A stretch of 64,000 nt of DNA from Thalia democratica (lineage: Eukaryota), in assembly GCA_965202585.1 (NCBI GenBank), contig OZ241828.1, positions 76,012,001-76,076,000 on the forward strand, written 5' to 3'. How positions within the stretch are numbered: the stretch's first letter is position 1; every line of letters begins with the position of its first letter. The notes beneath the pieces are model-generated. The model ran no database searches. It saw nothing but the letters and a program-made list of their open reading frames with translations, and was not told where the DNA came from. Positions 10,055-62,500 of this stretch are shown here, one piece after another. The position numbers were made by a program, and so were the translations under genes.

Positions 10055-11579
10055 AGCTTCACATATGAAAATTGACGATCGAATCCTTTTATGTTCACTT
10101 CATCAGGAGTGTCGTGTCTTATTGTGGTGATTGCTGTTCGAAGTTAGTATAAAGTTGTCAAATAACAATAATTTGTTTCATAATGTTTGCTTTTAACTTT
10201 TGTTTTGACTTTATTTAATTCTTCTATATACAACTTTTGGACAACTTATTTTAATCTTTATTTTTACTGATGATAACTGTTTAAAGCTCAAAACAAGTAA
10301 TAAAAGTAAACATTTTAAAAACCTACGAAAAAATTTTAGAAATTATTAAGGTAACTTACCACACTTATCAACATCAATAAGCAAGACTAATAAAATTATC
10401 AAAATAGATATAAAACTTAAAATAAAAAAAAGTGTAAAGTTCTATATACGTTCACATACAACATTTAAAAAAATTGAGACAACTATAACACTTTTGACAA
10501 AATATACACTAATATGAAAATAAACATTAGAAAAGCTTAAAAACGACATAAAAATTATAATTCATTAAAAGGAAAGCTCGTTAATACTGTTTACTGTTTT
10601 GTAAATTTTTGAATCAACCAACCATTGTTTCAGGTGACGTTGCGAAACACAACATTTAAAAAAAATTGAGTCAACTATAACACTTTTGACAAAATATGCT
10701 CTAATATAAAAAATAAACATTAGAAAAAATTACTAACAACATAAATATTTATAACTCATTAAAAGTAAAGCTCGATAACACTGTTTATTATTTCGTTAAA
10801 TTTTTAAATCAACCAACTAGTGTTTCCGGTGACGTTGCAAAACACTGTGACGTAGTTGCGACCGGACGGGTTCAAAGTGTACATACCGGAAACGACATCC
10901 GGGTTGAAAACCCTCATCTCGTTACACGTCCTGTAAAACCTCCTCTCAACGTTTTCCGGCTTCAGCTTCGCGTTCTCAGCCTTCAGCTCGTCCAAGTCCC
11001 GTTGCATCTTGTTCATTTTGACCTCCGAAGCCTGAAAATCCTCTACAAACTGCTGGGAGATGTTCAACAGGACCCGGTTGTTCTCAATTATTTTCCTCTC
11101 CGCTTCTAACGGTACCCTTCCAACTTCTCCCTACAATTTCATCTAGTTTAACTTTGAGTTTTTAATAGTTTTTTATTTTATTTTATACTATAATTTATAT
11201 AGTTAGATGCTTTAACTATTATTTGATTGGATTTAACAGTTATTTTAATTAAAAAAATTTATTTACTATTTCGGTTTATAATGCTGTCTTTTATTTTCTT
11301 TTTAATTTTTAGTTTATAATGTATTTCTTTCATTTTATTTTACTTTCTTAATTTTTACTTATTTTTATGTTTAATTTCAATTATTTTCACCTTGCTCCCC
11401 TTAGGCCCGGCACTTCCAGCAGGTCCGTGCTTCCCGGGAAGTCCCGGAGGTCCTGCGGTGTTTTCCCTCTGTTGAAACTCCGATCCTTGCAAGTTTATGT
11501 TCAAGCTTGGACAATCGCTCTCCTGAGCGTTGAACAAACGGAACAGTGACGTAATAATCAAACACAAAATTAACTTCAT
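9985..11579 (-). pseudogene. Copy A, truncated: exons 11391-11579 and 10818-11130, then exon 3 (starts 10133) broken at ~10053 and joined out of frame to a Penelope-like fragment (stop at 9985)
   Basis: Exon 3 homology ends at ...TCATATGTGAAGCTAG, then reads EIFCTSMLHCAKAFQRWLGNAV*. Exons 4-5 are absent. The upstream acceptor-like AG conserved in the other copies is TG here. Confidence 0.8.
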
Positions 11580-14500
11580 TTTGTTGTTTGATGAGGGTAT
11601 TAGCAACAAAAAAATTAAAAATTTATTATAAGTTATTTAATAAATAGGTATTTAACGGTAAAGTGTTATTATTCGAAGAAAAGAAAATCAACAAACATTG
11701 AACAAATATTTAAAATTATTAAAAATGGTAGCTTTAGGTGGTAAACACCACAAGATTTTTTAAAACGTTTTTTTTTAATATAACACATCTAACTTTTTCT
11801 ATTTAAGCAACATAAAAAAGAACAAAATACCGTACAAAAAGTTGAAAAATTATGTTCAGGTTAATCTTAATATTTTTTGGTACAATATTATTTTCAAAAT
11901 AAAGTATGATTTTTATAAAAATATACAACTAGACTAATCTATAAAACTAGTATTGAATATTTAACTAGCTTTGCTTAAATCTTTCTCAACAAATTAAAAA
12001 AATATTGTTTTCTCAGTCTTGCTTATGTTTTTTTATAACATTATAAAGCTTAACTTTTAAACAGAAGTTTGCTCACAACGTGTTCAGAAAACAGCTAAGC
12101 TTATTAACAATTTTTAAACTAGTTGTTTCAATCACAAAAAGTGTGTAAACTGAAAATATCATGTATAAGTATAATAAGTTTGTTAACTAATGTTTTATCC
12201 TAAAAAAAATTATCTGTCACATAAAAAATAAGGTTTCTAAGTTTAAAAACAACGTTTTTCAACTACAAACATTTGTTTACATTTACAGCTTTTATATATT
12301 TTGCGATATTTGTATTCTGACCATGATAGTTCTGATCTACAATAATACTTAACTTTATCTTTTGTTTTAAACGGTCGATAAAAACAGAATAACATAAAGT
12401 TATTCATTTATAAAAGCACTAACACTCGACTAATGTTTGCTCAACCAAGTCTATAACGGCAATGTTTTACTAAATCAGTGTTTCTTTTGGTTAATGTATA
12501 ACTAAGTTGTGTAAAAATAAAACTTGTGGTTTGATAAAGTGAAGTTGATAAATATTGTTTAAGCTGTTTAAACTTTTATTTGTTGAAAGTTTTACAGTAA
12601 CATCAAGTTTGAATAATTAAAACAGTTCTATTTTGTGTTGTTGTCCGTCATTTCTTTATAAATTTTAATTAATCTTAGTTTTCTGGCTTTCTACAAAACA
12701 TGAAAAATAATTAAGTAAAGTTTTATGTATGTTCTTAAAACCCTAAAATAAGCGAAGTAACAATTATATTACAAAGTTTTCTGTTTTAAAATTTCTGTAC
12801 AGTCTATTAAACTTGATATATATTGAAAATCTTCTAAAATTTTTACAGGTTTTACCAAACTTTAATCGGAAAAAATAATTAATAACAAAAATGAATATTA
12901 CAAACCCACCTTTCTCTTACTAAGATTAGTTTAGTAGTTAATACAGCTGTCGGATAAACACGGCCCTCAGACCAAACAAAGCCTAAGGCGTGTTTGTAAG
13001 CTGTTAATATTAAATTTAGTAGAATTAACTTCATTTTTTGTTTTAAATAAAGTTTTCAACTATTTGTTTTTGATTGTGAGTAAACTATGCTGTTTATTCC
13101 ATGTATACTTCTTTATCAAGTAAAATTTTTTCTAAATATTGTTGCCTGCGAAGCGGTTTTCAGGGCATGTTAATTTAACTTTTGTCAAAACAAAAATGTT
13201 TATTGTTGGACTGTAAATAAACTGCAGGTTAAAATTTAAACGACATACAAATTAAGCAAAACTCTATTAAAACAGATAACAGATAATAAATGCATTTTTT
13301 GAAAATATTCATGCATTGATAAAAAGTAAGAATTTCAATGCAATACATATAAAATAAAAAGAAAAGTTTAAAATTCACTCATTTGTTTTTTGTGTGCATC
13401 AAAAACTTTTTTATTCTTAAAAATACTTGCATTTAAACTTAAATGCGGAACAACTTTTAAAACATTTTAAAAATCTTTATGAGTTTATAGTATACAAATA
13501 ACCTAACCCTTTAAAATATTAATTAATACAATATCATTTCATAAATATCCGATACATGTCAACCTAGATTACACAAGCGCAGAATATTTTAGATTCTGTT
13601 CTAACCTGTATCAAACTAAGTAGGCTGTAAGTTTTACGCTTCGATTTTATAATAATTTCTCGCTGAAACATTACGTAATAGCCAAGTTTGTAACTCATAA
13701 CCTTGTACACATATTTATGATCCCAGTTAAATATGTAGTAGCCAGTTTTATGGTTAAAACTTAAGCTAGTACTTGAAATATAAATTTAAAGCAAGTATGT
13801 AGCTTGGTCAAACCCAAGCTTTTATAAATCAGCCGAAACAAATCTACGAAATTAATTTCGCAAAGCTTGCATACTACCAGTAATTGTTTATTTACGATTT
13901 TTATAAAAATAAGTAATAAATATGTGTGAATATCAGAAATTTTTTTATTTACACATAATTGTAATAAAAATAAGAGCTAAGAATCTATACAAAATGTGTT
14001 TTAATATAGCATAATATTAATATAAACTAGTTTTAAGCTATTAATTTACATATCTTTTTTTTTTTATGGTAGAACAGAAATTAAACTATTACAGTTTTAA
14101 GCTTATGTTAAAACTTCTTGTTTTCTTGTTATTTTACTTAATATTTTATTTATATTTTATAAAAATAAAGTGAAGTTAAATGTCAATACTGCAGTAAGCA
14201 GGTTTTTAAAAATAAGAAGTCAAGTTTGAAAACCCAAGGCCTTATTAACAGGCCAAAAATTGTTTTACAAAAGTTCTAAAAATAAAAACTTATTTCCTTT
14301 TTTAATATATCAAACTAACAAAACTTTATAAATCAAATAAAAACTAGTTTGTAGTTTCATATTAGGCCTTTTCTTAAAATAAACAAAAAATTCTAAAAAA
14401 TCCTTTTTTTGTGTGTAAGTATGTAAGATTTTTAATATGCGATAAAAAACACATAATTGTAAGAAAATGACAGCTAAACTCAAGAGTAACAAAATTGCAC

Positions 14501-17842: not shown

Positions 17843-20309
17843 CTGTTTTTTGAAGTATCAGTTTCTAAATGTTCCTTAGAATTGTAAAGTACCTTTCCAA
17901 CATTCGTTTCAAATATAGTATATGTAATGAAGAAAGTTACTGAAGTTAAAAAACTTTAACAATAAAAACATATAGTACAAACAGCTGATACTCTCAGCAA
18001 TGTGTGATATCTTTTAAAAAATAATATTTTCTTTTATTTACGCTAATACATAATTTTACCAATTACTCCACCTTTTAAATGTATTTTTTATTTTTAACTT
18101 CATACCAAACTCACTGCTATAGTTTTTTTATTTAAAACGTAAATAACTTTTTATACCAATCAAGCATGTTGGTCCAACAAAACCAATACAAATTCCTACC
18201 GGTCATTCCACATGCACAGTGGTGTGATTTAGTAGCTCCGCCCCAATAATTCTGCCTGGTACCGTCCTGAGACGCCCAATAACCGTATTGATCGTCCGAT
18301 TTCAACAAGATGGAGCCCTTGCATCTATACTGTTTATTTTATTTCAATTCAATGAACAACTAGTATGAAAACTATTTGAAAACACTTTCTGAGAAAAGCT
18401 TCTAGTTGAAAAATTGTTTTAATGTTAATAAGTGTCTTGCAACTGGTCAACAGAATTCAGTTACTGCCCAGAAACTAAATTTAAATCATTACTTCAAACA
18501 GTTTTTACAAGCTTTAATTTTAAGGTATATATTAAAAACATAAACTAATTGTATGTTTACTAAAATAATAAAACAATTATTCCGCCTAGTCTGCATATAT
18601 TTTTATTTTATTTTTATAACTATTTGAAGTCTAAGAATAGCTGAATTAAAGCTACTAAGCAAAAATTTTATGGAATCTTTTTTTTTCCAACAGAAGTTGT
18701 TTTAAATTTTGTTATTCTAGAATTACAATTACTTTTATAAACTGCCTGCAGTACAAATGAGCATCTATGATCTCCCTGATGTAACTCGATGGTAATTCAT
18801 ACTCAACTAGCTTTCCATATGAAAGATGAGGATCGAATCCTTTTATGTTCACTTCATCAGGAGTGTCGTGTCTTATTGTGGTGATTGCTGTTCGAAGTTA
18901 ATATAAAGTTGTCAAATAACAATAATTTGTTTTATAATGTTAGCTTTTGACATTCGTTTTAACTTTATTTAATTCTTCTATATGCAACTTTTGGACAACT
19001 TATTCTAATCTTTATTTTTACTGATGATAACTGTTTCAAGCTCAAAACAAGTAATAAAAGTAAACATTTTAAAAACCTACAAAATTTTTTTAGAAATTAT
19101 TAAGGTAATTTACCACACTTATCAACATCAATAAGCAAGACTAAAAAAAGTTATCAAAATAATTATAAAATTTTAAATAAAAAAAAAGTGTAAAGTTTTA
19201 TATACGTTCACATACAACATTTAAAAAAATTGAGACAACTATAACAGTTTTGATAAAATATACTCTAATATAAAAGTTAAACATTAGAAAAGCGTATTAA
19301 CAACATAAAAGATATAATTCAATAAAAGAAATGCTCGTTAACACCGTTTACTGTTTTGTAAATTTTTGAGCATAACGTTCACATACAACATTTAAAGAAC
19401 GTTAAGACAACTATAAAACTTTTGACAAAATATACTCTAATATAAAAGTTAAACATTAGAAAAAATCACTGACAACATAAATAATTATAATTCATTAAAA
19501 GACGATAACACCGTTTACTGTTTTGTTAATTTTTGAATCAACCAACCAGTGTTTCCGGTGACGTTGCAAAACACTGTGACGTAATAGTGACCGGACGGGT
19601 TCAAAGTGTACATACCAGAAACGACATCCGGGTTGAACACCCTCATCTCGCTGCACGTCCTGTAAAACCTCCTCTCAACGTTTTCCCGCTTCAGCTTCGC
19701 GTTCTCAGCCTTCAGCTCGTCCAAGTCCCGTTGCATCTTGTTCATCTTGACCTCCGAAGCCCGAAAAACCTCTACAAACTGCCGGGAGATGTTCAGCAGG
19801 ACCCGGTTGTTCTCTATTATTTTCCTCTCCGCTTCCAACGGTACCCTTCCAACGTCTCCCTAAAATTTCATCTAGTTTAACTTTGAGTTTTTAATAGTTT
19901 TTTATTTTATTTTATACTATAATTTATATAGTTAGATGCTTTAACTATTATTTAATTGGATTTAACAGTTATTTTATTTAAAAAAAATTTATTTACTATT
20001 TCGGTTTATAATGCTGTCTTTTATTTTCTTTTTAATTTTTAGTTTATAATGTTTTTCTTTCATTTTATTTTACTTTCTTAATTTTTACTTATTTTTACGT
20101 TTAATTTCAATTATTTTCACCTTGCTCCCCTTAGGCCCGGCACTTCCAGCAGGTCCGTGCTTCCCGGGAAGTCCCGGAGGTCCTGCGGTGTTTTCCCTCT
20201 GTTGAAACTCCGATCCTTGCAAGTTTATGTTCAAGCTTGGACAATCGCTCTCCTGAGCGTTGAACAAATGGAACAGTGACGTAATAGTCAAACACAAAAT
20301 TAACTTCAT
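17661..20309 (-). CDS. Copy B, intact 322-aa secreted collagen/coiled-coil/Caspr-type fibrinogen-like protein (ficolin/collectin-like architecture); join(20121-20309, 19547-19859, 18733-18887, 18200-18329, 17661-17842)
   Basis: All four introns are GT-AG with compatible phases 0,1,0,1. Exons 189+313+155+130+182 = 969 nt, open to TAA. Translation: signal MKLILCLTITSLFHLFNA, (GXY)9 GPPGLPGKHGPAGSAGPKGSKGDVGRV, heptad neck, RTCSEMR..SGMYTLNPSG..VFCNVT, HDTPDEVNIKG..YCRQFIK YRCKGS..YWGGA..CACG..KCNCDQN..SDEGYL..LPVGYLRFGDTG..ELGPLECF, which matches the Caspr/neurexin-IV fibrinogen-like domain pattern from recall. Confidence 0.88.
18200..18329 (-). CDS. Copy B exon 4 (YRCKGSILLKSDDQYGYWASQDGTRQNYWGGATKSHHCACGMT)
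   Basis: Acceptor aaacAG|TAT, donor ACCG|GTAGGA. Confidence 0.88.
18733..18887 (-). CDS. Copy B exon 3 (AITTIRHDTPDEVNIKGFDPHLSYGKLVEYELPSSYIREIIDAHLYCRQFIK)
   Basis: Acceptor aacAG|CA, donor AAA|GTAATT; open frame missed by the ORF track. Confidence 0.88.
19547..19859 (-). CDS. Copy B exon 2 (end of collagen, coiled coil, start of fibrinogen-like domain)
   Basis: Acceptor ttttAG|GGAGAC continues the GXY register; donor ACTG|GTTGGT, phase 1. Confidence 0.9.
20121..20309 (-). CDS. Copy B exon 1 (signal peptide, Cys, first 7 GXY triplets)
   Basis: ATG at 20309; donor AAG|GTGAAA at 20120; 63 codons, phase 0. Confidence 0.9.
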
Positions 20310-20319
20310 TTTTGTTGTT

Positions 20320-20345
20320 TGATGAGGGTATTAGCTACAAAAAAA
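20320..20345 (-). promoter_or_regulatory. Splice-acceptor-like site 25 nt upstream of the copy B ATG (5'-UTR intron or trans-splice acceptor)
   Basis: TTTTTTGTAG|CTAATAC, preceded by ~125 nt without AG; conserved in B, C (32857), D (56797) and E (58874). Confidence 0.45.
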
Positions 20346-22534
20346 TTAAAAATTTATTATAAGTTATTTAATAAATAGGTATTTAATGTTAAAGAGTTAT
20401 TATTCGAAGAAAAGAAAATCAACAAACATTGAACAAATATTTAAAATTATTAAAAATGGTAGCTTTAGGTGGTAAACACCACAAGATTTTTTAAAACGTT
20501 TTTTTTTTAATATAACACATCTAACTTTTTCTATTTAAGCAACATAAAAAAGAACAAAATACCGTACAAAAAGTTGAAAAATTATGTTCAGGTTAATCTT
20601 AATATTTTTTGGTACAATATTATTTCCAAAATAAAGTATGATTTTTATAAAAATATACAACTAGATTAATCTATAAAACTAGTATTGAATGTTTAACTAG
20701 CTTTGCTTAAATCTTTCTCAACAAATTAAAAAATATTGTTTTCTCAGTCTTGCTTATGTTTTTTTTATAACATTATAAAGCTTAACTTTTAAACAGAAGT
20801 TTGCTCACAACGTGTTCAGAAAACAGCTAAGCTTATTAACAATTTTTAAACTAGTTGTTTCAATCACAAAAAGTGTGTAAACTGAAAATATCATGTATAA
20901 GTATAATAAGTTTGTTAACTAATGTTTTATCCTAAAAAAAATTATCTGTCACATAAAAAATAAGGTTTCTAAGTTTAAAAACAACGTTTTTCAACTACAA
21001 ACATTTGTTTACATTTACAGCTTTTATATATTTTGCGATATTTGTATTCTGACCATGATAGTTCTGATCTACAATAATACTTAACTTTATCTTTTGTTTT
21101 AAACGGTCGATAAAAACAGAATAACATAAAGTTATTCATTTATAAAAGCACTAACACTCGACTAATGTTTGCTCAACCAAGTCTATAACGGCAATGTTTT
21201 ACTAAATCAGTGTTTCTTTTGGTTAATGTATAACTAAGTTGTGTAAAAATAAAACTTGTGGTTTGATAAAGTGAAGTTGATAAATGTTGTTTAAGCTGTT
21301 TAAACTTTTATTTGTTGAAAGTTTTACAGTAACATCAAGTTTGAATAAATAAAACAGTTCTATTTTGTGTTGTTGTCCGTCATTTCTTTATAAATTTTAA
21401 TTAATCTTAGTTTTCTGGCTTTCTACAAAACATGAAAAATAATTAAGTAAAGTTTTATGTATGTTCTTAAAACCCTAAAATAAGCGAAGTAACAATAATA
21501 TTACAAAGTTTTTTGTTTTAAAATTTCTGTACAGTCTATTAAACTTGATATACATTGAAAATATTCTAAAATTTTTACAGGTTTTACCAAACTTTGATCG
21601 GAAAAAATAATTAATAACAAAAATGAATATTACAAACCCACCTTTCTCTTACTAAGATTAGTTTAGTAGTTAATACAGCTGTCGGAAAAATACGGCCCTC
21701 AGACCAAATAAAGCCCAGGGCCTGTTTATTAGCTCTTGATATTAAATTAAGTAGAATTAACTTCATCTTTTGTTTTAAATAAAGTTTTCAACTATTTGTT
21801 TTTGATTGTGAGTAAACTATGCTGTTTATTCCATGTATACTTCTTTATCAAGTAAAATTTTTCCTAAATATTGTTGCCTGCGAAGCGGTTTTCAGGGCAT
21901 GTTAATTTAACTTTTGTTAAAACAAAAATGTTTATTGTTTGACTGTAAATAAACTGCAGGTTAAAATTTAAACGACATACAAATTAAGCAAAACTCTATT
22001 GAAACAGATAACAGATAAATGCATTTTTTGAAAATATTCATGCATTGATAAAAAGTAAGAATTTCAATGCATCAATATGTATTTTAAACTACTTTGCAAA
22101 ACATGACACTACAAAATAAAAACCAATGCATCTTCAAACAATACTTAAGCTTACGTTATTAAAAAGCTAAAACTATTTTATACTGACCTAGTGAGTCAAA
22201 CTTATTTTATGAATTTTAAATTTTAACTACATTTTATTTTAGTATTTGTCTTATATTAAATTCCAGACAGAAGAAAATATTTAAATAACATAATATTAAT
22301 TTATCTATATACTATAATAATATAGTTTATTGTTTTCTTACTATAACTTTTATAATTGTTTTTTTTTTCTTTCTATAAATATTTGACATTAAGTAAAAGT
22401 TTTAAATAAAAATAAAATTTTTGTAAATTCTTTTAAGAGGTTCTCCGAAATTGATAAGTAAAAAGATAAGGCTTATAAATTATGAGAATATATAAATTCA
22501 TCATTATTAAGCAACCAACAATATTTACATTATT

Positions 22535-30524: not shown

Positions 30525-32832
30525 CTGTTTTTTGAAGTCTCAATTGCTAAATGTTCCTTAGAATTGTAAAGTACCTTTCCAACATTCGTTTCAAATATAG
30601 TATATGTAATGAAGAAAGTTACTGAAGTTAAAACACTTCAACCTAAGTAAAACATAAAGTACAAACAACTGATACTCTCTGCAATGTATGATATTGTTTT
30701 AAGATTAATATTTTCTTCCAATTACACTTTTATTTATTTTCAACCATTAATTAACATTTTATCTAAAATTCTTTTTTTAAACTTCATACCAAACTCACTG
30801 CTATAGTTTTTTTATTTAAAATGTAAATAATTTTGTATATTGATCAAGCATATTTGTCAAATAAAACCAATACAAATTCCTACCAGTCATTCCACATGCA
30901 CAGTGGTGTGATTTAGTAGCTCCTCCCCAGTAATTCCGCCTGGTACCGTCCTGAGAGGCCCAATAACCGTACTGATCGTCCGATTTCAACAAGATGGAGC
31001 CCTTGCATCGGTACTGTTAGTTTAATTTTAACCCAGTTAGCAACGAGTATGGAAACTAGTTGAAAACACTTTCTGAGAAAAGCTTCTAGTTGAAATATTG
31101 TTTTAATGTTAATAAGTGTCTTGCAATTGGTCAACAGAATTCAGTTACTGCCCAGAAACTAAATTTAAATCATTACTTCAAACACTTTTTACAAACTTTA
31201 ATTTTAAGGTATATATTAAAAACATAAACTAATTGTATGTTTACTAAAATAATAAAACAATTATTCCGCCTAGTCTGCATATATTTTTATTTTATTTTTA
31301 TAACTATTTGAAGTCTAAGAATAGCTAAATTAAAGCTACTAAGCAAAAATTTTATGGAATCTTTTTTTTCCAACAGAAGTTGTTTTAAATTTTGTTATTC
31401 TAGAAATACAATTACTTTTATAAACTGCCTGCAGTACAAATGAGCATCTATGATCTCTCTGATATAACTCGATGGTAATTCATACTCAACTAGCTTTCCA
31501 TATGAAAGATGAGGATCGAATCCTTTTATGTTCACTTCATCAGGAGTGTCGTGTCTTATTGTGGTGATTGCTGTTCGAAGTTAGTATAAAAGTTGCTAGA
31601 TAACAATAATTTGTTTTATAGTGTTTGCTTTTGACATTCGTTTTAACTTTATTTAATTCTTCTATATACAACTTTTGGACAACTTATTTTAATCTTTATT
31701 TTTACTGATGATAACTGTTTCAAGCTCAAAACAAGTAATAAAAGTAAACATTTTAAAAACCTACGAAAATTTTTAGATATTATTAAGGTAATTTACCACA
31801 CTTATCAACATCAATAAGCAAGACTAAAAAAAATTATTAAAATAATTATAAAACTTAAAATAAAAAAAAGTGTAAAGTTTTATATACGTTCACATACAAC
31901 ATTTAAAAAAATTGAGACAACTATAACAGTTTTGATAAAATATACTCTAATATAAAAGTTAAACATTAGAAAAGCGTATTAACAACATAAAAAATTAAAA
32001 TTCATTAAAAGTAAAGCTCGATAACACTGTTTACTGTTTCGTTAATTTTTGAATCAACCAACCAGTGTTTCCGGTGACGTTGCAGAACACTGTGACGTAA
32101 TAGTGACCGGACGGGTTCAAAGTGTACATACCAGAAACGACATCCGGGTTGAAAGCCCTCATCTCGCCGCACGTCCTGTAAAACCTCCTCTCAACGTTTT
32201 CCCGCTTCAGCTTCGCGTTCTGAACCTTCAGCTCGTCCAAGTCCCGTTGCATCTCGTTCATCTTGACCTCCGAAGCCCGAAAAACCTCTATAAACTGCCG
32301 GGAGATGTTCAGCAGGACCCGGTTGTTCTCAATTATTTTCCTCTCCGCTTCCAACGGTACCCTTCCAACTTCTCCCTTTATTTTTATTATTTTTTATTTT
32401 TGTTTTTTTTTTTGTTTATCTAATATTTGAGCTCGTCAGATACTTTGCTCATCATTTTATTCATAACATTATTCATTTTATTCATTGTATACTTTTAAGT
32501 CATTCACCTGTTTTTTTTATTTCATACTGTTGTTTATATTATACGATTTTTATCTTTAAACGTTTTAATTTTTTAATTGTATGTTTTATCAATTACTTTA
32601 ACTAAATTTGCTTATTTTTATGTTTAACTTTAATTATTTTCACCTTGCTTCCTTTAGGCCCAGCACTTCCAGCGGGTCCGTGTTTCCCAGGAAGTCCCGG
32701 AGGTCCTGCGGTGTTTTCCCCTCGCTGAAACTCCGATCCTTGCAAGTTTATGTTTAAGCTGGGACAGTCGCTTTCTTGAGCGCATATGGAGCACAATAGT
32801 GACGTAAAAATAAAACAAAAAAATAACTTCAT
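30343..32832 (-). CDS. Copy C, intact 322-aa paralog; join(32644-32832, 32063-32375, 31416-31570, 30884-31013, 30343-30524)
   Basis: Same exon sizes and phases as copy B. Exons 3-5 differ from B by 12 synonymous and 1 non-synonymous change (hand count). The intron-1 acceptor is an A-rich aaataaAG. Confidence 0.86.
30884..31013 (-). CDS. Copy C exon 4
   Basis: ctaacAG|TAC CGA TGC...ATG ACT G|GTAGGA. Confidence 0.87.
31416..31570 (-). CDS. Copy C exon 3
   Basis: Protein identical to B exon 3; AG/GT boundaries. Confidence 0.87.
32063..32375 (-). CDS. Copy C exon 2
   Basis: GEVGRVPLEAERK...NVTGNT; donor G|GTTGGT. Confidence 0.87.
32644..32832 (-). CDS. Copy C exon 1
   Basis: MKLFFCFIFTSLLCSICA signal; donor AAG|GTGAAA. 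Confidence 0.88.
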
Positions 32833-35800
32833 TTTTTTGTTTGGTGAGCGTATTAGCTACAAAAAAAAATTGAAAGTAATTATAAGTTATTTATGAATTA
32901 ATATCTTATGTAAAAGTGATATTGTTTGGAGAAATTGAAAATCAACAAACATTGAAACATTGGAACAAACATTAAAATTTATTAATAATAGTAGCATTAA
33001 GTGGTAAACAACACAAGAATTTTTATAAGGTTTTTCTTTTTTTTTTAACACATCTAACTTTTTCTAGTTAAGCAACATAAAAAAGAATATAATAACGTAC
33101 AAAAAGTTAAAAAATTATGTTCAGATTAATTTTGATATTTTTGTTGTACAATATTATATTTAAAATAACGTATAATTTTTATAAAAAGAAATAACTAGCT
33201 TAATTTATAAAAGTAACAAATTTTTAACTAGCTTTGCTTAAGTCTTTCTCGACAAATTTAAAAAATAATGTTTTCTCGGTCTTGCTTATGTTTTTTTTTT
33301 AATTTTCAAAAGCTTGCTACAAGTAATTTTTTGAAACAGAAGTTTGCTCACAACGTGTTTCAGAAAACTTTTAAGCTTATTAACAACTTTTAAAATAGTT
33401 GTTTTAATCACAAAAAGTGTGTAAACTGAAAATATCATGTATAAGTATAATAAGTTTGTCAACTAATGTTTTCCTCTAAACAAAATTATATGTCACATAA
33501 AAAATAAAAGGTTTTCTAAGTTTAAAAACAACTTTTTTCAACAACAAACATTTGTTTACATTTACAGCTTCTATATATTTTGCGATATTTGTATTCTGAC
33601 CATGATAGTTCTGATCTACAATAATACTTAACTTTATCTTTTGTTTTAAACGGTCGATAAAAACAGAATAACATAAAGTTATTCATTTATAAAAGCACTA
33701 ACACTCGACTAATGTTTGCTCAACCAAGTCTATAACGGCAATGTTTTACTAAATCAGTGTTTCTTTTGGTTAATGTATAACTAAGTTATGTAAAAACAAA
33801 GTTTGTACTTTGATAAAGTGAAGTTGACAAATGTTGTTTAACCAGTTTAAACTTTTATTTGTTGAAAGTTTTACAGTAACATCAAGTTTAAATAAATAAA
33901 ACAGTTCTATTTTGTATTGCTTTCCGTCAGTTCTTTATAAATTTTTACTAACTTGAGTTTTAAAACTATCAAAAAAAACATAAAATTAAACCCAGTAAAA
34001 CTATACGTATGTTTCTAAAACCCTTAAATAAGCGAAACAACTATCATATTTTAAAGTTTTCTTCATTTGAAAGTTTTATACACCCCAAAAATTAATATAT
34101 ATTTTGAATATTCTAACACTTTTACAGGTTTTCCAAAATTTTAATCAAAAAAAATAAATAAATTACATATAAAAATATACAATATTAAAACCAAATTTTC
34201 TCTTACTAAAATTAGCTAAATCACTAATGCAGTGGTCGGATAAATACCGCCCTCAGACCAAACAAAGCCTAAGGCGTGTTTGTAAGCTGTTAATATTAAA
34301 TTTAGTAGAATTAACTTAATCTTTTGTTTTAAATAAAGTTTTCAAATATTTATTTTTTTTCTTGTGAGTAAACTATGCTGTTTTTTTTTATGTATACTTC
34401 TTTTATCAAGTTAACTTTTTCTAATTATTGTAGCCTGCGAAGCGGTTTTCAGTGCATGTTAAATTAACTTTTGTTAAAACAATAGTATTTATTGCTCGAC
34501 TGTAAATAAACTGCAGGTTAACATTTAAACGGCATCTAAAACTGCAAAATAAGCATAATTCTATTAAAACTGATAATAGCTAAATGCGTTTTATGAAACT
34601 ATTCATGCAAGGATATAAATGTAAGAATTTGAATTCAATATATATAAAATAAAAATAAAAGTTTAAAACTGACTCTTTTTTTTTGTGCATCAAAAACTTT
34701 TTTATTACCCAAAATGCTTGCATTCAGACTTTAATGCGGAACAACCATTCAAACATTTTTAAAGTCTTTGTGAGTTTATTTCGATTTATATGTATTTATT
34801 CTAACCCTTTAAAATATTCATTAATATAATATCATTTTATATAAATGCGTTACAGTGTTAACCTAGATTACACAAGCGCAGAATATTTTAAATTCTGTTC
34901 AAACCTGTATCAAACTAAGTAGGCAGTAAGTTTTACGCTTCGATTTCATAATAATTTGTTGCTGAAACATTACCTAATAGCCAAGTTTGCAACTCATAAC
35001 CTTGTACACATATTTATGAACACAGTTAAATATATAATAGCCAGTTTTATGGTTAAAACTTAAGCTAGTACTTGAAATATAAGTTTAAAGCAAGTACGTA
35101 GCTTAGTCAAACCCAAGCTTTTATAAATCAGCCGAAACAAATCTACGAAATTATTTTTTATAGAGCTTGCATATTACCAGTAGTTGTTTACTTACGATGT
35201 ATATAAAAGTAAGTAATGAATAATGAATCAGAAATGTTTTGATTTACACATAATTGTACGAAAATAAGAGCTAAGAATCTATACAAAATGTGTTTTGATA
35301 TAGCATTATATTAATATACTAGTTTTAAGCTATTAATTTACATATCATTTTTTATGTTAGAACAGAAATTAAACTATTACAATTTTAAGCTTATGTTAAA
35401 ACTTCTTGTTTATTTGTTGCATATAATGCATATAATGTATACCGCAAATTAAAATACAGAAGGTTCAAAATAAAGTATTTTAGTCAGTGAATACTAAAGT
35501 TTATAAAGAAAAAAACTAATGCAAATTAAACGAAATAAAAGAATGCATTTTAAAGAACTTTAGTTAATTTTAATTACAAAAGTAAATACCCTGGCCTAAT
35601 ACATTCTTCCACAGTTAACTTATAACTGAAACATTTTTGCTGTTTTTATCAATTTAATTTGTCGACGTTGAGATAATAGTTTTATTGTAGATTACTATAT
35701 TCTATTATCACTAAACTATTTTTATAAAACAATAATTAAAAGTTTGTAGACATTTTATTTTTAGTACATTTAACGGTTTCTAGCGTATATAATTTTTTAG

Positions 35801-56836: not shown

Positions 56837-58848
56837 TTTTATGAACTGCCTGCAGTGCAGATGAGCATCTACAATCTCTCTGATGTAGCTCGATGGTAAT
56901 TCGTACTCTACAAGCTTTACATATGAAAAATGAGGGTCGAATCCTTTTATGTTCACTTCATCAGGAGTATACATCAGGAGTATACATCAGGAGTACATAT
57001 AAAATAAAAAGAAAAGTTTAAAATTCACTCATTTGTTTTTTGTGTGCATCAAAAACTTTTTTATTCTTAAAAATACTTGCATTTAAACTTAAATGCGGAA
57101 CAACTATTAAAACATTTTAAAAATCTTTATGAGTTTATAGTACACAAATAACCTAACCCTTTAAAATATTAATTAATACACTATCATTTTATATATATGC
57201 GTTACAGTGTTATCCTAGATAATACAAGCGCATAATATTTTCAATTCTGTTCAAACCTGTATCAAACTAAATAGGCTGTAAGTTTTACGCTTCGATTTTA
57301 TAATAATTTCTTGCTGAAACATTACCTAATAGCCAAGTTTGCAACTCATAACCTTGTACACATATTTATGAACACAGTTAAATATATAATAGCCAGTTTT
57401 ATGGTTAAAACTTAAGCTAGTACTTGAAATATAAGTTTTAAGCAACTACGTAGCTTGGTCAAACCCAAGCTTTCATAATCAGCCGAAACAAATCTACGAA
57501 ATTAATTTCGCAAAGCTTGCATACTACCAGTAATTGTTTATTTACGATTTTTATAAAAATAAGTAATAAATATGTGTGAATATCAGAAATTTTTTTATTT
57601 ACACATAATTGTAAGTTATCAAATAACAACAATGTTTGCTTTTGACACTCGCTTTAATTTTTTTGTCTTTTATAAACAACTTTTATATTACTTTTCTTAA
57701 TTTTTATTTCTACCGGTGGTAAAATTTTGTTTCAAGCTCTGAAGCAAAACAGTTCAGTAAATATTTATCACCTGTAAAAAAATATTAAAAATTTTTTAGG
57801 TAATTTACCACACTTATCAATATCAATAAGCAAGACTAATAAATAATACCAAACTTATAAAACTTAAAATTAATGAAGAGTGAAGTTCTATATTTTACAC
57901 AAATTTCTGAGCATAACGTTCACATACAACATTTAAAGAACGTTAAGACAACTATAACACTTTTGACAAAATATACTCTAATATAAAAGTTAAACATTAG
58001 AAAAAATCACTAGAAACATAAAAAATTATAATTCATTAAAAGGAAAGCTCGTTAAAACTGTTTACTGTTTTGTAAATTTTTAAATCAACCAACCGGTGTT
58101 TCCGGTGACGTTGCAAAACACTGTGACGTAATAGTGACCGGACGGGTTCAAAGTGTACATACCGGAAACTACATCCGGGTTAAAAATCCTCATCTCGCCG
58201 CACGTCCTGTAAAACCTCCTCTCAACGTTTTCCCGCTTCAGCTTCGCGTTCTCGGCCTTCAGCTCGTCCAAGTCCCGTTGCATCTCGTTCATCTTGACCT
58301 CCGAAGCCCGAAAAACCTCTACAAACTGCTGGGAGATGTTCAACAGGACCCGGTTGTTCTCTATTATTTTCCTCTCCGCTTCCAACGGTACTCTTCCAAC
58401 CTCTCCCTTTATTTTTATTGTTATTTTTTTGTTTATTTAATATTTGAGCTCGTCAGATATTTTGCTCATCATTTGTTTATAACATTATTTATTTTATTCA
58501 TTGTTTACTTTTATCATCATTCACTTGTTTTCTTATTTCATATTGTTGTTTACATTATAAGATTTTTATTTTGAAAGGTTTTAATTTTTTAATTGTATGT
58601 TTTATAAATTACTTTAACTAAATTTACTTATTTTTATGTTTAATTTCGATAATTTTCACCTTGCTCCCCTTAGGCCCGGCACTTCCAGCAGGTCCGTGCT
58701 TCCCGGGAAGTCCCGGAGGTCCTGCGGTGTTTTCCCTCCGTTGAAACTCCGATCCTTGCAAGTTTATATTCAAGCTTGGACAATCGCTCTCCTGAGCGTT
58801 GAACAAACGGAACAGTGACGTAATAATCAAACACAAAATTAACTTCAT
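56837..58848 (-). pseudogene. Copy E, disrupted: intact exons 58660-58848 and 58094-58406, a 5'-truncated exon 3 (56837-56968), exons 4-5 missing
   Basis: The exon-3 acceptor and first ~23 nt are replaced by a ~620-bp copy of upstream intergenic DNA. The exon-3 donor is followed after ~16 bp by the upstream flank of copy D. Confidence 0.8.
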
Positions 58849-59256
58849 TTTTGTTGTTTGATGAGGGTATTAGCTACAAAAAAATTAATAATTTATTATA
58901 AGTTATTTAATAAATAGGTATTTAATGTTAAAGTGTTATTATTCGAAGAAAAGAAAATCAACAAACATTGAACAAATATTTAAAATTATTAAAAATGGTA
59001 GCTTTAGGTGGTAAACACCACAAGATTTTTTAAAACGTTTTTTTTTTAATATAACACATCTAACTTTTTCTATTTAAGCAACATAAAAAAGAACAAAATA
59101 CCGTACAAAAAGTTGAAAAATTATGTTCAGGTTAATCTTAGTATTTTTTGGTACAATATTATTTTCAAAATAAAGTATGATTTTTATAAAAATATACAAC
59201 TAGATTAATCTATAAAACTAGTATTGAATATTTAACTAGCTTTGCTTAAATCTTTC

Positions 59257-59508
59257 TCAACAAATTAATAAACAATGAACTTTACCGCAAGATCAACAAC
59301 AACAGCATCCGAGACAATCCTACGACCGGTTTCGTCCTTATTAGGACTCATCAGGCAGGAATAGTCGCGAGAAACCGCTATTGTGATCTTAAACAAGCGG
59401 GCTTAAGTACTTGTTGTTGATCTTGCGGTAAAGTTCATTGTTTATTATCGATGGCATAAAACATCTCAACATTGTTGATGATGGCCGAAATAAATATCAA
59501 CAAATTAA
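59257..59508 (-). mobile_element. Young 240-bp Penelope-type pLTR/retrozyme-like insertion with 12-bp TSD and 37-bp inverted repeat
   Basis: TSD TCAACAAATTAA at 59257-59268 and 59497-59508. Perfect IR at 59266-59302 / 59411-59447. The homologous sites upstream of copies A (~11990), B (~20720) and C (~33250) are empty. Confidence 0.85.
59318..59360 (-). ncRNA. Minimal type I hammerhead ribozyme
   Basis: Minus strand reads UCCUGC CUGAUGA GUCC-UAAUAA-GGAC GAAA CCG GUC^ GUAGGA. It has the invariant CUGAUGA/GAAA core, a 4-bp stem II, a 6-bp stem I (UCCUGC:GUAGGA) and a palindromic ACCGGU stem III with a GUC triplet. Predicted cut between 59324 and 59323. Confidence 0.88.
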
Positions 59509-62500
59509 AAAATATTGTTTTCTCAGTCTTGCTTATGTTTTTTTTATAACATTATAAAGCTTAACTTTTAAACAGAAGTTCGCTCACAACGTGTTCAGAA
59601 AACAGCTAAGCTTATTAACAATTTTTAAACTAGTTGTTTCAATCACAAAAAGTGTGTAAACTGAAAATATCATGTACAAGTATAATAAGTTTGTTAACTA
59701 ATGTTTTATCCTAAAAAAATTATCTGTCACATAAAAAATAAGGTTTCTAAGTTTAAAAACAACGTTTTTCAACTACAAACATTTGTTTACATTTACAGCT
59801 TTTATATATTTTGCGATATTTGTATTCTGACCATGATAGTTCTGATCTACAATAATACTTAACTTTATCTTTTGTTTTAAACGGTCGATAAAAACAGAAT
59901 AACATAAAGTTATTCATTTGTAAAAGCACTAACACTCGACTAATGTTTGCTCAACCAAGTCTACAATGGCAATGTTTTACTAAGTCAGTGTTTCTTTTGG
60001 TTAATGTATAACTAAGTTGTGTAAAAATAAAACTTGTGGTTTGATAAAGTGAAGTTGATAAATATTGTTTAAGCTGTTTAAACTTTTATTTGTTGAAAGT
60101 TTTACAGTAACATCAAGTTTGAATAAATAAAACAGTTCTATTTTGTGTTGTTGTCCGTCATTTCTTTATAAATTTTAATTAATCTTAGTTTTCTACAAAT
60201 CATAAAAAATAATTAAATAAAGTTTTATGTATGTTCCTAAAACCCTAAAATAAGCGAAATAACAATTATATTACAAAGTTTTCTGTTTTAAAATTTCTGT
60301 ACAGTCTATTAAACTTGTGATATATTTAAAATATTCTAAAATTTTTACAGGTTTTACCAAACTTTAATCGGAAAAAATAATTAATAACAAAAATGAATAT
60401 TACAAACCCACCTTTCTCTTACTAAGATTAGTTTAGTAGTTAATACAGCTGTCGGATAAATACGGCCCTCAGACCAAATAAAGCCCACGGCTCTTGATAT
60501 TAAATTAAGTAGAATTAACTTCATTTTTTGTTTTAAATAAAGTTTTCAACTATTTATTTTTTGATTGTGAGTAAACTGTGCTGTTTATTCCATGTATACT
60601 TCTTTATCAAGTAAAATTTTTTCTAAATATTGTTGCCTGCGAAGCGGTTTTCAGGGCATGTTAATTTAACTTTTGTTAAAACGAAAATGTTTATTGCTCG
60701 ACTGTAAATAAACTGCAGGTTAAAATTTAAACGACATACAAATTAAGCAAAACTCTATTAAAACAGATAACAGATAAATGCATTTATTGAAAATATTCAT
60801 GCATTGATAAAAAGTAAGAATTTCAATGCAATACATATAAAATAAAAAGAAAAGTTTAAAATTCACTCATTTGTTTTTTGTGTGCATCAAAAACTTTTTT
60901 ATTCTTAAAAATACTTGCATTTAAACTTAAATGCGGAACAACTATTAAAACATTTTAAAAATCTTTATGAGTTTATAGTATACAAATAACCTAACCCTTT
61001 AAAATATTAATTAATACAATATCATTTCATAAATATCCGATACATGTTAACCTAGATTACACAAGTGCTGAATATTTTAGATTCTGTTCTAACCTGTATC
61101 AAACTAAATAGGCAGTAAGTTTTACGTTTCGGTTTTATAATAATTTCTTGCTGAAACATTACGTAATAGCCAAGTTTGCAACTCATAACCTTGTACACAT
61201 ATTTATGAACACAGTTAAATATATAATAGCCAGTTTTATGGTTAAAACTTAAGCTAGTACTTGAAATATAAGTTTAAAGCAAGAACGTAGCTTGGTCTAA
61301 CCAAAACTTTCATAATCAGCCGAAAGAAATCTACGAAATTAATTTCGCAAAGCTTGCATACTACCAGTAATTGTTTACTTACGATGTTTATAAAAATAAG
61401 TAATAAATATGTGTGAAAATCAGAAATTTTTTTATTTACACATAATTGTAATAAAAATAAGAGCTAAGAATCTATACAAAATGTGTTTTAATATAGCATA
61501 ATATTAATATAAACTAGTTTTAAGCTATTAATTTACATATCTTTTTTTTTTATGGTAGAACAGAAATTAAACTATTACAGTTTTAAGCTTATGTTAAAAC
61601 ATCTTGTTTTCTTGTTATTTTACTTAATATTTTATTTATATTTTATAAAAATAAAGTGAAGTTAAATGTCAATACTGCAGTAAGCAGGTTTTTAAAAATA
61701 AGAAGTCAAGTTTGAAAACCCAAGGCCTTATTAACAGGCCAAAAATTGTTTTACAAAAGTTCTAAAAATAAAAACTTATTTCCTTTTTTAATATATCAAA
61801 CTAACAAAACTTTATAAATCAAATAAAAACTAGTTTGTAGTTTCATATTAGGCCTATTCTTAAAATAAACAAAAAATTCTAAAAAATCATTTTTTGTGTG
61901 TAAGTATGTAAGATTTTTAATATGCGATAAAAAACACATAATTGTGAGAAAATGACAGCTAAACTCAAGAGTAACAAAATTGCACAGAAAGTATACAGCA
62001 AGTTAAAATACAGAAGGTTCAAAATAAAGTATTTTAGTCAGTTAATACTTAAGTATATAAAGTAATAACTAATGCAAATTGAACGAAAAAAAAAAGCATT
62101 TTAAAGAACTTTAGAATACTTAAGAATACTTAACTTAGAATTTACGTTTATAAAAGTCTTTGATTACTTTTTTCTTTAATACTTTTTAAAACTAAAAGTT
62201 AACAACTGGTATTACTTAAAAAATAAAAATTCTTTATAATTTAGTTTTATAAAGTAAATATCTTTTGTATCATTTTTGTTTTCCTTCTTACTTTAATTTT
62301 ATAATTGCTCAGCTCTCGTCGATTCTAAACTTTGGTATAAGTTTTACAAAACCAAAACTGGATTTTTACAAAAATTCTTCGTGCTCTTTTCTAATAGTCA
62401 ATCTGTTTACATATTTTGTTAGAAATAAGACCAAACAGATTGGATATGATTTTCAGTCTATAATTTGAAGACGTTTGTTTTTTTCAAACTGGCATTAGAT

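What the first reader, a model, noticed from the sequence alone, without database searches (positions are those of the whole stretch)
59257..59508. Fresh 240-bp retro-insertion carrying a complete hammerhead ribozyme between perfect 37-bp inverted repeats
Seen: a 12-bp TSD, a 37-bp perfect IR, and on the minus strand every conserved element of a minimal type I hammerhead (CUGAUGA, stem II GUCC/GGAC, GAAA, palindromic ACCGGU, GUC site, 6-bp stem I). Three paralogous sites in this window are empty, so the insertion is recent. Established: Penelope-like elements carry such minimal hammerheads in their pLTRs, these are thought to cleave as dimers through the palindromic loop III, and they often insert with an inverted 5'-truncated pLTR. 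Inference: an active PLE or non-autonomous retrozyme-like family is mobile in this genome. The IR could fold the whole RNA into a long hairpin with the ribozyme in the loop.
Basis: partly seen in the sequence, partly recalled or inferred. Interest (0 to 1): 0.8.

Follow-up and report, generated by a model that had tools for sequence, protein, structure and literature searches.

The report
Truncated hammerhead retrozyme copy, inserted head-to-head
This is one young, incomplete copy of a very abundant small non-coding jumping element that carries a self-cleaving hammerhead RNA; its perfect inverted repeat is a scar of how it inserted, so it is an ordinary member of a known class.

Summary
There is a 228-bp insertion (59269-59496) with a 12-bp target-site duplication. 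Three paralogous sites in the window are empty. The inverted repeat is 37 nt and perfect. A complete type I hammerhead lies on the minus strand (Rfam HH9, 38.4 bits, E 3.5e-6 over the window, below the gathering score).

Public-run contigs show what it is. About 6,000 contigs of the source organism match the element, at summed depth roughly 10^3-10^4 times the flanks. An RNA-library contig closes a 327-nt cycle through the hammerhead core. That cycle contains the two halves of this locus in the same orientation, plus 131 nt that this copy lacks.

The locus is therefore two 5'-truncated arms of one 327-nt unit, joined head-to-head with both 3' ends facing outward. The inverted repeat is only the 37 nt that both arms copied. 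This is the usual insertion shape of Penelope-like elements, and the element belongs to the animal non-LTR retrozymes (2020).

With one hammerhead and 60% of the unit, this copy is probably inert. Mobilisation by a Penelope-like element is inferred, not shown.

This scan has already reported the same ~328-nt family several times on other DNA of this genome.

The parts
59257..59268 (.). Left copy of the 12-bp target-site duplication TCAACAAATTAA. Its last 3 nt (TAA) also match the element end, a microhomology.
   Evidence: The empty paralogues carry the sequence once.
59269..59410 (-). Arm 1: a 5'-truncated copy of the unit in sense on the minus strand. It holds the hammerhead plus the first 34-37 nt of the following segment. 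Its 3' end faces the left duplication.
   Evidence: contig record 1 of X1 matches 59303-59411 with 0 differences and then continues into 131 nt absent here. X11 record 5 matches 59266-59411 with 0 differences.
59301..59372 (-). Type I hammerhead ribozyme motif. The predicted cut is after C59324, between 59324 and 59323.
   Evidence: Rfam HH9, 38.4 bits; dimer fold; helix I covaries across loci that share the core.
59266..59302 (.). Left arm of the perfect 37-nt inverted repeat, which is the 3' terminal part of arm 1.
59411..59447 (.). Right arm of the inverted repeat, which is the 5' part of arm 2.
59411..59496 (+). Arm 2: a second 5'-truncated piece of the same unit, in sense on the plus strand. 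Its 3' end faces the right duplication.
   Evidence: X1 record 1 holds 59411-59497 in the opposite orientation to 59303-59411 and directly joined to 59303.
59448..59496 (+). A 49-nt tail by which arm 2 runs further along the unit than arm 1. It is the canonical continuation of the unit.
   Evidence: X11 record 5 joins 59266 directly to 59448-59496.
59497..59508 (.). Right copy of the target-site duplication.
20718..20729 (.). Empty paralogous target site, the closest paralogue. The other two are at 11986-11997 and 33249-33258.

Best explanation
The insertion is a dead-on-arrival fragment of a roughly 327-nt non-coding retroelement, an animal non-LTR retrozyme, that has one type I hammerhead per unit. 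The family occurs as tandem or circular units in thousands of copies. Family RNA was copied into DNA at a staggered break 12 bp wide. The plus-strand 3'-OH primed cDNA 37 nt past the hammerhead segment and copied 142 nt (arm 1). The minus-strand 3'-OH primed 49 nt further along the unit and copied 86 nt (arm 2). The two incomplete cDNAs were then joined at 59410/59411. This gives two 5'-truncated arms head-to-head, a 37-bp perfect inverted repeat where both copied the same segment, a one-sided 49-nt tail and a 12-bp duplication. The enzyme was most likely supplied by a Penelope-like element. The geometry, family size, unit length and youth are shown. Dual priming and the Penelope-like source of the enzymes are inferred. 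With one hammerhead and 196 of 327 nt, this copy cannot release a unit-length RNA. Its ribozyme is predicted to cut well only when paired with a second copy.
For: The exact insertion limits and empty sites come. In one search, 6,156 contigs of run X8 lie on the element, at summed depth up to 1.7 million against 240-480 on the flanks. Of these, 896 contigs are at least 99% alike and 2,747 are 90-95% alike, which suggests a long-lived family with young members. Also, X1 record 1 (356 nt) leaves and re-enters the shared hammerhead-core word after 327 nt. It contains 59303-59411, then 131 nt absent here, then the reverse complement of 59411-59497, all with 0 differences. X11 record 5 shows the canonical direct join of arm 1 to the tail. 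Other copies also show opposite-strand joints (59274/59459, 59284/59458). Fifty-seven contigs end at 59266 with unlike flanks, so that 3' end recurs. Craig et al. 2021 (PMC8557442) describe frequent 5' truncation, an adjacent inverted 5'-truncated copy and a 30-40-bp tail at one end as typical of Penelope-like insertions. Metagenome contigs L001, L007 and L008 carry the identical hammerhead core beside RT and GIY-YIG ORFs. A 2026 preprint (10.64898/2026.07.22.740005) places animal retrozymes as non-autonomous derivatives of Penelope-like pLTRs. The dimer fold forms a 6-bp ACCGGU:ACCGGU helix III, whereas the monomer optimum pairs away part of the core.
Against: No Penelope-like ORF lies in this window: there is no ORF of 150 aa or more. 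I could not compare the family's 3' end with a resident Penelope-like element. Summed contig depth is not a true copy number, and the kind of run X8 is not on record. The hammerhead core word is shared with other repeat families, which inflates depth over 59324-59354. RNA-library contigs do not prove transcription, because trace DNA of a repeat with thousands of copies would look the same. The Rfam score is below the gathering threshold. Self-cleavage has not been tested.
Confidence: 0.85

Rival explanations
1. The element and structure are the same, but the family is mobilised by a LINE-type reverse transcriptase through classical twin priming, not by a Penelope-like element.
For: The geometry of two outward-facing 3' ends, 5' truncation, an inversion junction and a 12-bp duplication is exactly what twin priming produces. 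No Penelope-like ORF was seen in the window.
Against: Neither outer end carries a poly(A) or microsatellite tail. Hammerheads with this same core sit beside RT/GIY-YIG ORFs. The one-sided tail is described for Penelope-like elements and said not to occur in LINE insertion (PMC8557442). Retrozymes co-occur with and are related to Penelope-like pLTRs.
Confidence: 0.1
2. It is a solo pLTR fragment of an autonomous Penelope-like element rather than a copy of a separate non-autonomous retrozyme family.
For: pLTRs carry hammerheads, and insertions are often severely 5'-truncated.
Against: Hammerhead-to-hammerhead spacing in the contig cycle is 327 nt, not the roughly 3 kb expected across an ORF. The roughly 6,000 contigs and the earlier notes of 328-nt tandem arrays point to a short repeat unit.
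Confidence: 0.04
3. It is a DNA transposon or MITE with 37-bp terminal inverted repeats, or a purpose-built hairpin RNA gene with the ribozyme in its loop.
For: The inverted repeat is perfect and the insert is flanked by a duplication. A transcript would fold into a 37-bp hairpin at -93.7 kcal/mol.
Against: The right arm is 49 nt from the insertion end. The family unit has the segment once and in direct order. Other copies break at other points (joints). Twelve bp is long for a MITE duplication.
Confidence: 0.01

Closest known systems
Animal non-LTR retrozymes (Cervera and de la Pena 2020, PMC7229834)
   Same: The unit is short (327 nt, within the 170-400 nt range), AT-rich and non-coding, with one type I hammerhead per unit. 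It is organised in tandem or as a circle, copy number is high, and the duplication is longer than 4 bp.
   Different: This copy is a 60% fragment with one ribozyme, arranged as two inverted arms. CircRNA and self-cleavage were not shown here. The papers I read name no tunicate, and earlier scan notes call this genome a tunicate, which I did not test.
Penelope-like element insertions with pLTR hammerheads (PMC4209133, PMC8557442)
   Same: It shows 5' truncation, an inverted 5'-truncated partner copy, a tail at one end only, and a hammerhead with a short palindromic helix III. The identical core lies next to RT/GIY-YIG ORFs in L001, L007 and L008.
   Different: There is no ORF here. The tail is 49 nt against the 30-40 nt described. 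The hammerhead has the canonical 6-bp helix I and 4-bp helix II rather than the min-HHR layout.
Amphibian satellite 2 / axolotl HHR_Amex1 repeats of 330 bp (PMC7229834)
   Same: The unit length is nearly the same. Helix III is one base pair capped by a palindromic tetraloop. Activity is predicted to depend on dimers.
   Different: No sequence similarity beyond the ribozyme core was tested or expected, and the host lineage differs.
L1 twin-priming inversions
   Same: Both target strands appear to have primed cDNA, giving an inverted 5' part.
   Different: There is no poly(A), and the two arms overlap by 37 nt instead of being roughly contiguous.

Membership tests
Hammerhead ribozyme, type I | Conserved core C3-A9, G12-A14, the A15.1:U16.1 pair and a cleavable H17 | tested here: met
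   CUGAUGA, GAA, the A..U pair and C17 are all present on the minus strand. The Rfam HH9 alignment covers model positions 1-77.
Hammerhead ribozyme, type I | Three helices around the core, with helix I open | tested here: met
   Helix I is 6 bp plus a distal helix, helix II is 4 bp, and helix III is 1-2 bp and palindromic. Helix I changes on both sides at 5 of 6 pairs across loci that share the core.
Hammerhead ribozyme, type I | Score at or above Rfam's curated threshold | tested here: not met
   38.4 bits against a gathering score of 52. The shortfall comes mainly from the missing helix III loop. E is 3.5e-6 over the window.
Hammerhead ribozyme, type I | Self-cleavage | not testable with these tools
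   Only folding was done. The dimer optimum is the double hammerhead.
Animal non-LTR retrozyme | Short non-coding unit (about 170-400 nt) with a type I hammerhead, repeated in tandem | tested here: met
   A 327-nt cycle runs through the hammerhead core in contig X1 record 1. This locus itself is a single fragment, not a tandem.
Animal non-LTR retrozyme | Multicopy, dispersed, with target-site duplications | tested here: met
   6,156 contigs with unlike flanks and a 12-bp duplication with empty paralogues.
Animal non-LTR retrozyme | Expressed as linear and circular RNA | tested here: inconclusive
   The unit is present in RNA libraries X1 and X2 while the flanks are absent. Trace DNA of a repeat with thousands of copies would give the same result.
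Penelope-like element (autonomous) | ORF with reverse transcriptase and GIY-YIG endonuclease | tested here: not met
   The window has no ORF of 150 aa or more, and the insert is 228 bp.
Penelope-like mobilisation (non-autonomous) | Insertion scars: 5' truncation, an inverted 5'-truncated partner, a one-sided tail | tested here: met
   One search compared with the description in PMC8557442.
Penelope-like mobilisation (non-autonomous) | Sequence shared with the pLTR or 3' end of a resident autonomous element | not testable with these tools
   I had no access to the rest of the genome. Only foreign metagenome elements share the core.
MITE / DNA transposon | Terminal inverted repeats present in all family copies | tested here: not met
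   The repeat is not terminal on one side and is absent from the canonical unit.

The most novel reading that the evidence does not exclude
The family may be transposing now in this marine animal and may be expressed as a 327-nt circular RNA. The sequence-perfect unit seen in an ocean metatranscriptome would then be real RNA. In that case, copies such as this one record cDNA synthesis primed from both target strands on a tandem or circular template, which would be a readable trace of the still undefined Penelope-like integration mechanism. The host would also be a lineage where retrozymes have not been described.
Probability: 0.3. Interest if true: 0.45.

Novelty: new member of a known kind. 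Interest (0 to 1): 0.22.

Why it matters
On its own this copy matters little. It is a routine, probably inert fragment of a repeat family that this scan has already met several times in the same genome.

Its modest value is as a clean example. The empty paralogous sites fix the insertion limits to the base, so both outer junctions (3-nt and 1-nt microhomology) and the inner junction of a head-to-head insertion can be read without ambiguity. A collection of such young copies could constrain how Penelope-like enzymes integrate, which is not yet understood.

The insertion lies 421 bp upstream of the start codon of one member of a tandem collagen/ficolin-like gene family, in the same orientation. 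It could be checked for an effect on that paralogue.

Tried and rejected
**Presence/absence polymorphism.**
- The contig in run X8 that skips the 240 bp carries exactly the two differences of the 20.7-kb paralogue (59581 and 59677 C>T). It is that paralogue, not an empty allele.
- X8 holds 0.76 of the sampled words of 59069-59696. That equals the 0.759 expected if every locus-specific word is missing.
- Contig building drops minority branches among collapsed paralogues, so this says nothing either way.

**Other copies in public collections.**
- The metagenome scan with the core pattern gave nine loci that share only 32-36 nt of ribozyme.
- Two scans of viral contigs found nothing.
- The genome scan gave one 23-nt chance match inside a bacterial gene (L010).

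**Other checks.**
- There are no other copies in the window.
- Looking up earlier findings by sequence, and by words for a resident reverse transcriptase, came back blank.
- Near-identical copies in runs labelled organisms C, D and E and in many marine metagenomes look at first like horizontal spread. Their depth is 3-17 against 1.7 million in X8, and the flanks are absent. Traces of the source animal's DNA explain this, because a repeat with thousands of copies is detectable when single-copy DNA is not.
- I rejected the MITE reading and the purpose-built hairpin reading.

Full report
**Observation**

A perfect 37-nt inverted repeat has arms at 59266-59302 and 59411-59447, 108 nt apart. Only one other long close inverted repeat exists in the 64 kb. 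The 12-mer TCAACAAATTAA occurs at 59257-59268 and 59497-59508.

The flanks belong to a segment present four to five times in the window. At 11986-11997, 20718-20729 and 33249-33258 the left and right flanks abut with a single copy of the 12-mer. The insertion is therefore exactly 228 bp (59269-59496) plus a 12-bp target-site duplication. It is younger than a duplication whose copies differ by only 1-3% near the site.

**The ribozyme**

On the minus strand, 59372-59301 contains:
- CUGAUGA;
- helix II, GUCC/GGAC, with a 6-nt loop;
- GAAA;
- the palindrome ACCGGU;
- GUC, with the predicted cut after C59324;
- a 6-bp helix I, followed by an internal loop and a distal helix.

Rfam's HH9 model aligns end to end at 38.4 bits. 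E is 2e-8 for the local search and 3.5e-6 for the whole window, where it is the only match with E up to 1. The score is below the gathering threshold of 52, so a default scan lists nothing. The loss comes mainly from the missing helix III loop.

This layout is what Cervera and de la Pena call the canonical metazoan type I hammerhead: helix I 6 bp, helix II 4 bp, and helix III 1-2 bp with a palindromic loop. They predict it works as a dimer (PMC4209133).

Folding agrees with that prediction. The monomer optimum pairs away CUG of the core. Two copies together give the double hammerhead with a 6-bp ACCGGU:ACCGGU helix III, at -46.5 against 2 x -21.2 kcal/mol.

A metagenome scan for the core with a free loop 2 returned nine loci from other organisms. 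In those loci helix I differs in sequence but stays complementary, with changes on both sides at 5 of 6 pairs. Helix II and the core are invariant there by construction of the search pattern.

**What the element is**

The window holds no second copy, so I used public runs.

In run X8, from the organism that also holds the flanks, 6,156 contigs lie on the element. Summed word depth reaches 1.7 million over the core and 0.5-0.6 million over 59426-59488, against 240-480 on the flanks. This is not a true copy number, but it indicates thousands of copies. Identities range from at least 99% (896 contigs) to under 90% (641 contigs). Loose ends have unlike sequences, as expected for dispersed copies.

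The key record is a 356-nt contig from an RNA library (X1 record 1). It matches:
- 59325-59411 on the plus strand;
- then 131 nt that are absent from the window;
- then 59411-59497 on the minus strand;
- then 59303-59353 on the plus strand.

All of these have no differences. The contig leaves and re-enters the shared 31-nt core word after 327 nt. The source molecules are therefore tandem or circular units of 327 nt with one hammerhead each. In that unit the segment 59411-59497 has the opposite orientation to the one it has in this locus. A contig from another run (X11 record 5) independently joins 59266 directly to 59448-59496.

**Anatomy of the locus**

Arm 1 is sense on the minus strand, 59410 down to 59269. 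It holds the hammerhead segment plus the next 37 nt.

Arm 2 is sense on the plus strand, 59411 to 59496. It holds the same 37 nt plus 49 more.

Both arms are 5'-truncated and meet head-to-head, with both 3' ends abutting the duplication. The perfect inverted repeat is simply the 37 nt present in both arms. The 131-nt remainder of the unit is missing.

The outer junctions show 3 nt (TAA) and 1 nt of overlap with the target. The inner junction shows 0-1 nt.

**Mechanism**

Each strand of the target ends in the duplicated 12-mer immediately before its arm. This is the geometry expected if both 3'-OH ends of a 12-bp staggered break primed cDNA on family RNA and the two incomplete cDNAs were then joined. 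This step is inferred.

Other family copies also show opposite-strand joints at other positions. Fifty-seven contigs end at 59266 with diverse flanks, so that 3' end recurs.

Craig et al. list exactly these features as typical of Penelope-like insertions: heavy 5' truncation, an adjacent inverted 5'-truncated copy, and a 30-40-bp tail at one end only. They say these are not seen with LINEs (PMC8557442).

The link to Penelope-like elements has two further supports:
- Three of the metagenome loci (L001, L007, L008) carry the identical core on the same strand as long ORFs. L007 has both RVT_1 and GIY-YIG hits, L001 GIY-YIG only and L008 RVT_1 only. In L001 and L007 the core lies downstream of that ORF, in L008 upstream.
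- A 2026 preprint places animal retrozymes as non-autonomous derivatives of Penelope-like pLTRs.

I could not test whether a resident Penelope-like element shares this family's 3' end. The window has no ORF of 150 aa or more.

**Consequences for this copy**

This copy has one hammerhead and 196 of 327 nt, so it cannot release a unit-length RNA.

That is an accident of insertion and not a family trait.

The insert lies 421 bp upstream of the ATG at 58848 of a minus-strand gene. The first exon of that gene encodes a signal-like peptide and a collagen repeat. No RNA contig covers the flanks.

**Limits**

- RNA-library contigs do not prove transcription, because trace DNA of such a repeat would look the same.
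- Trace DNA also explains the element's presence at depth 3-17 in runs labelled with other organisms and in many marine metagenomes.
- The contig that skips the insertion is the 20.7-kb paralogue.
- The missing locus-specific words in X8 are explained by how contigs are built, so polymorphism remains open.

**Comparison and verdict**

The element fits the animal non-LTR retrozymes described in 2020 (PMC7229834). Its insertion scars are those described for Penelope-like elements.

Earlier follow-ups in this scan reached the same reading for a ~328-nt family on other pieces of this genome. I reproduced the unit length, the abundance and the head-to-head shape independently. Their statement that the host is a tunicate was not tested here, and the papers I read mention no tunicate.

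This is a new member of a known kind and of low interest.

Noticed in passing
window:26915-27066: There is a second foldback: two 64-nt arms, 94% complementary, 24 nt apart, in very AT-rich sequence. It has no hammerhead match. It could be a MITE-like hairpin or another head-to-head insertion.
   Followed up: partly
window:59324-59358 (contigs of runs X8 and X1): The 31-nt hammerhead core word is shared by at least two other repeat contexts. Contigs continue with quite different sequence before 59324 and after 59358, for example TCATCAGACCACAAG... So several hammerhead-bearing families coexist in this organism.
   Followed up: no
L001:712-742, L007:3847-3877, L008:837-867: Metagenome contigs from unidentified organisms carry RT and GIY-YIG ORFs (Penelope-like elements). 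Their hammerhead has a core, helix II and helix III identical to the window's. Helix I is 4 bp, with a compensatory G:C to A:U change in L007 and L008.
   Followed up: partly
L004:34-1463: A lake-metagenome contig holds four identical hammerheads at alternating spacings of 607 and 185 nt. It is a tandem retrozyme-like array from another organism, with a 6-bp helix I (GCCUAA/UUAGGU).
   Followed up: no
window:56213-60500, 11024-12989, 19753-21721, 32269-34275: A segment is repeated four to five times. It holds the first exons of a minus-strand gene family: a signal-like peptide, a short collagen repeat and a coiled-coil-like stretch. Identity near the insertion site is 97-99% for two of the copies.
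   Followed up: partly
window:59269-59496 in runs X11-X28: The repeat is detectable in many marine and seawater metagenomes, and in runs labelled with other organisms, where the flanks are not. Such a high-copy element could serve as a sensitive tracer of this animal's DNA in environmental samples.
   Followed up: no
L010:5252-5274: There is a 23-nt exact match to the element inside a coding region of a Lachnospiraceae MAG. Nothing around it matches, so it is a chance hit.
   Followed up: yes
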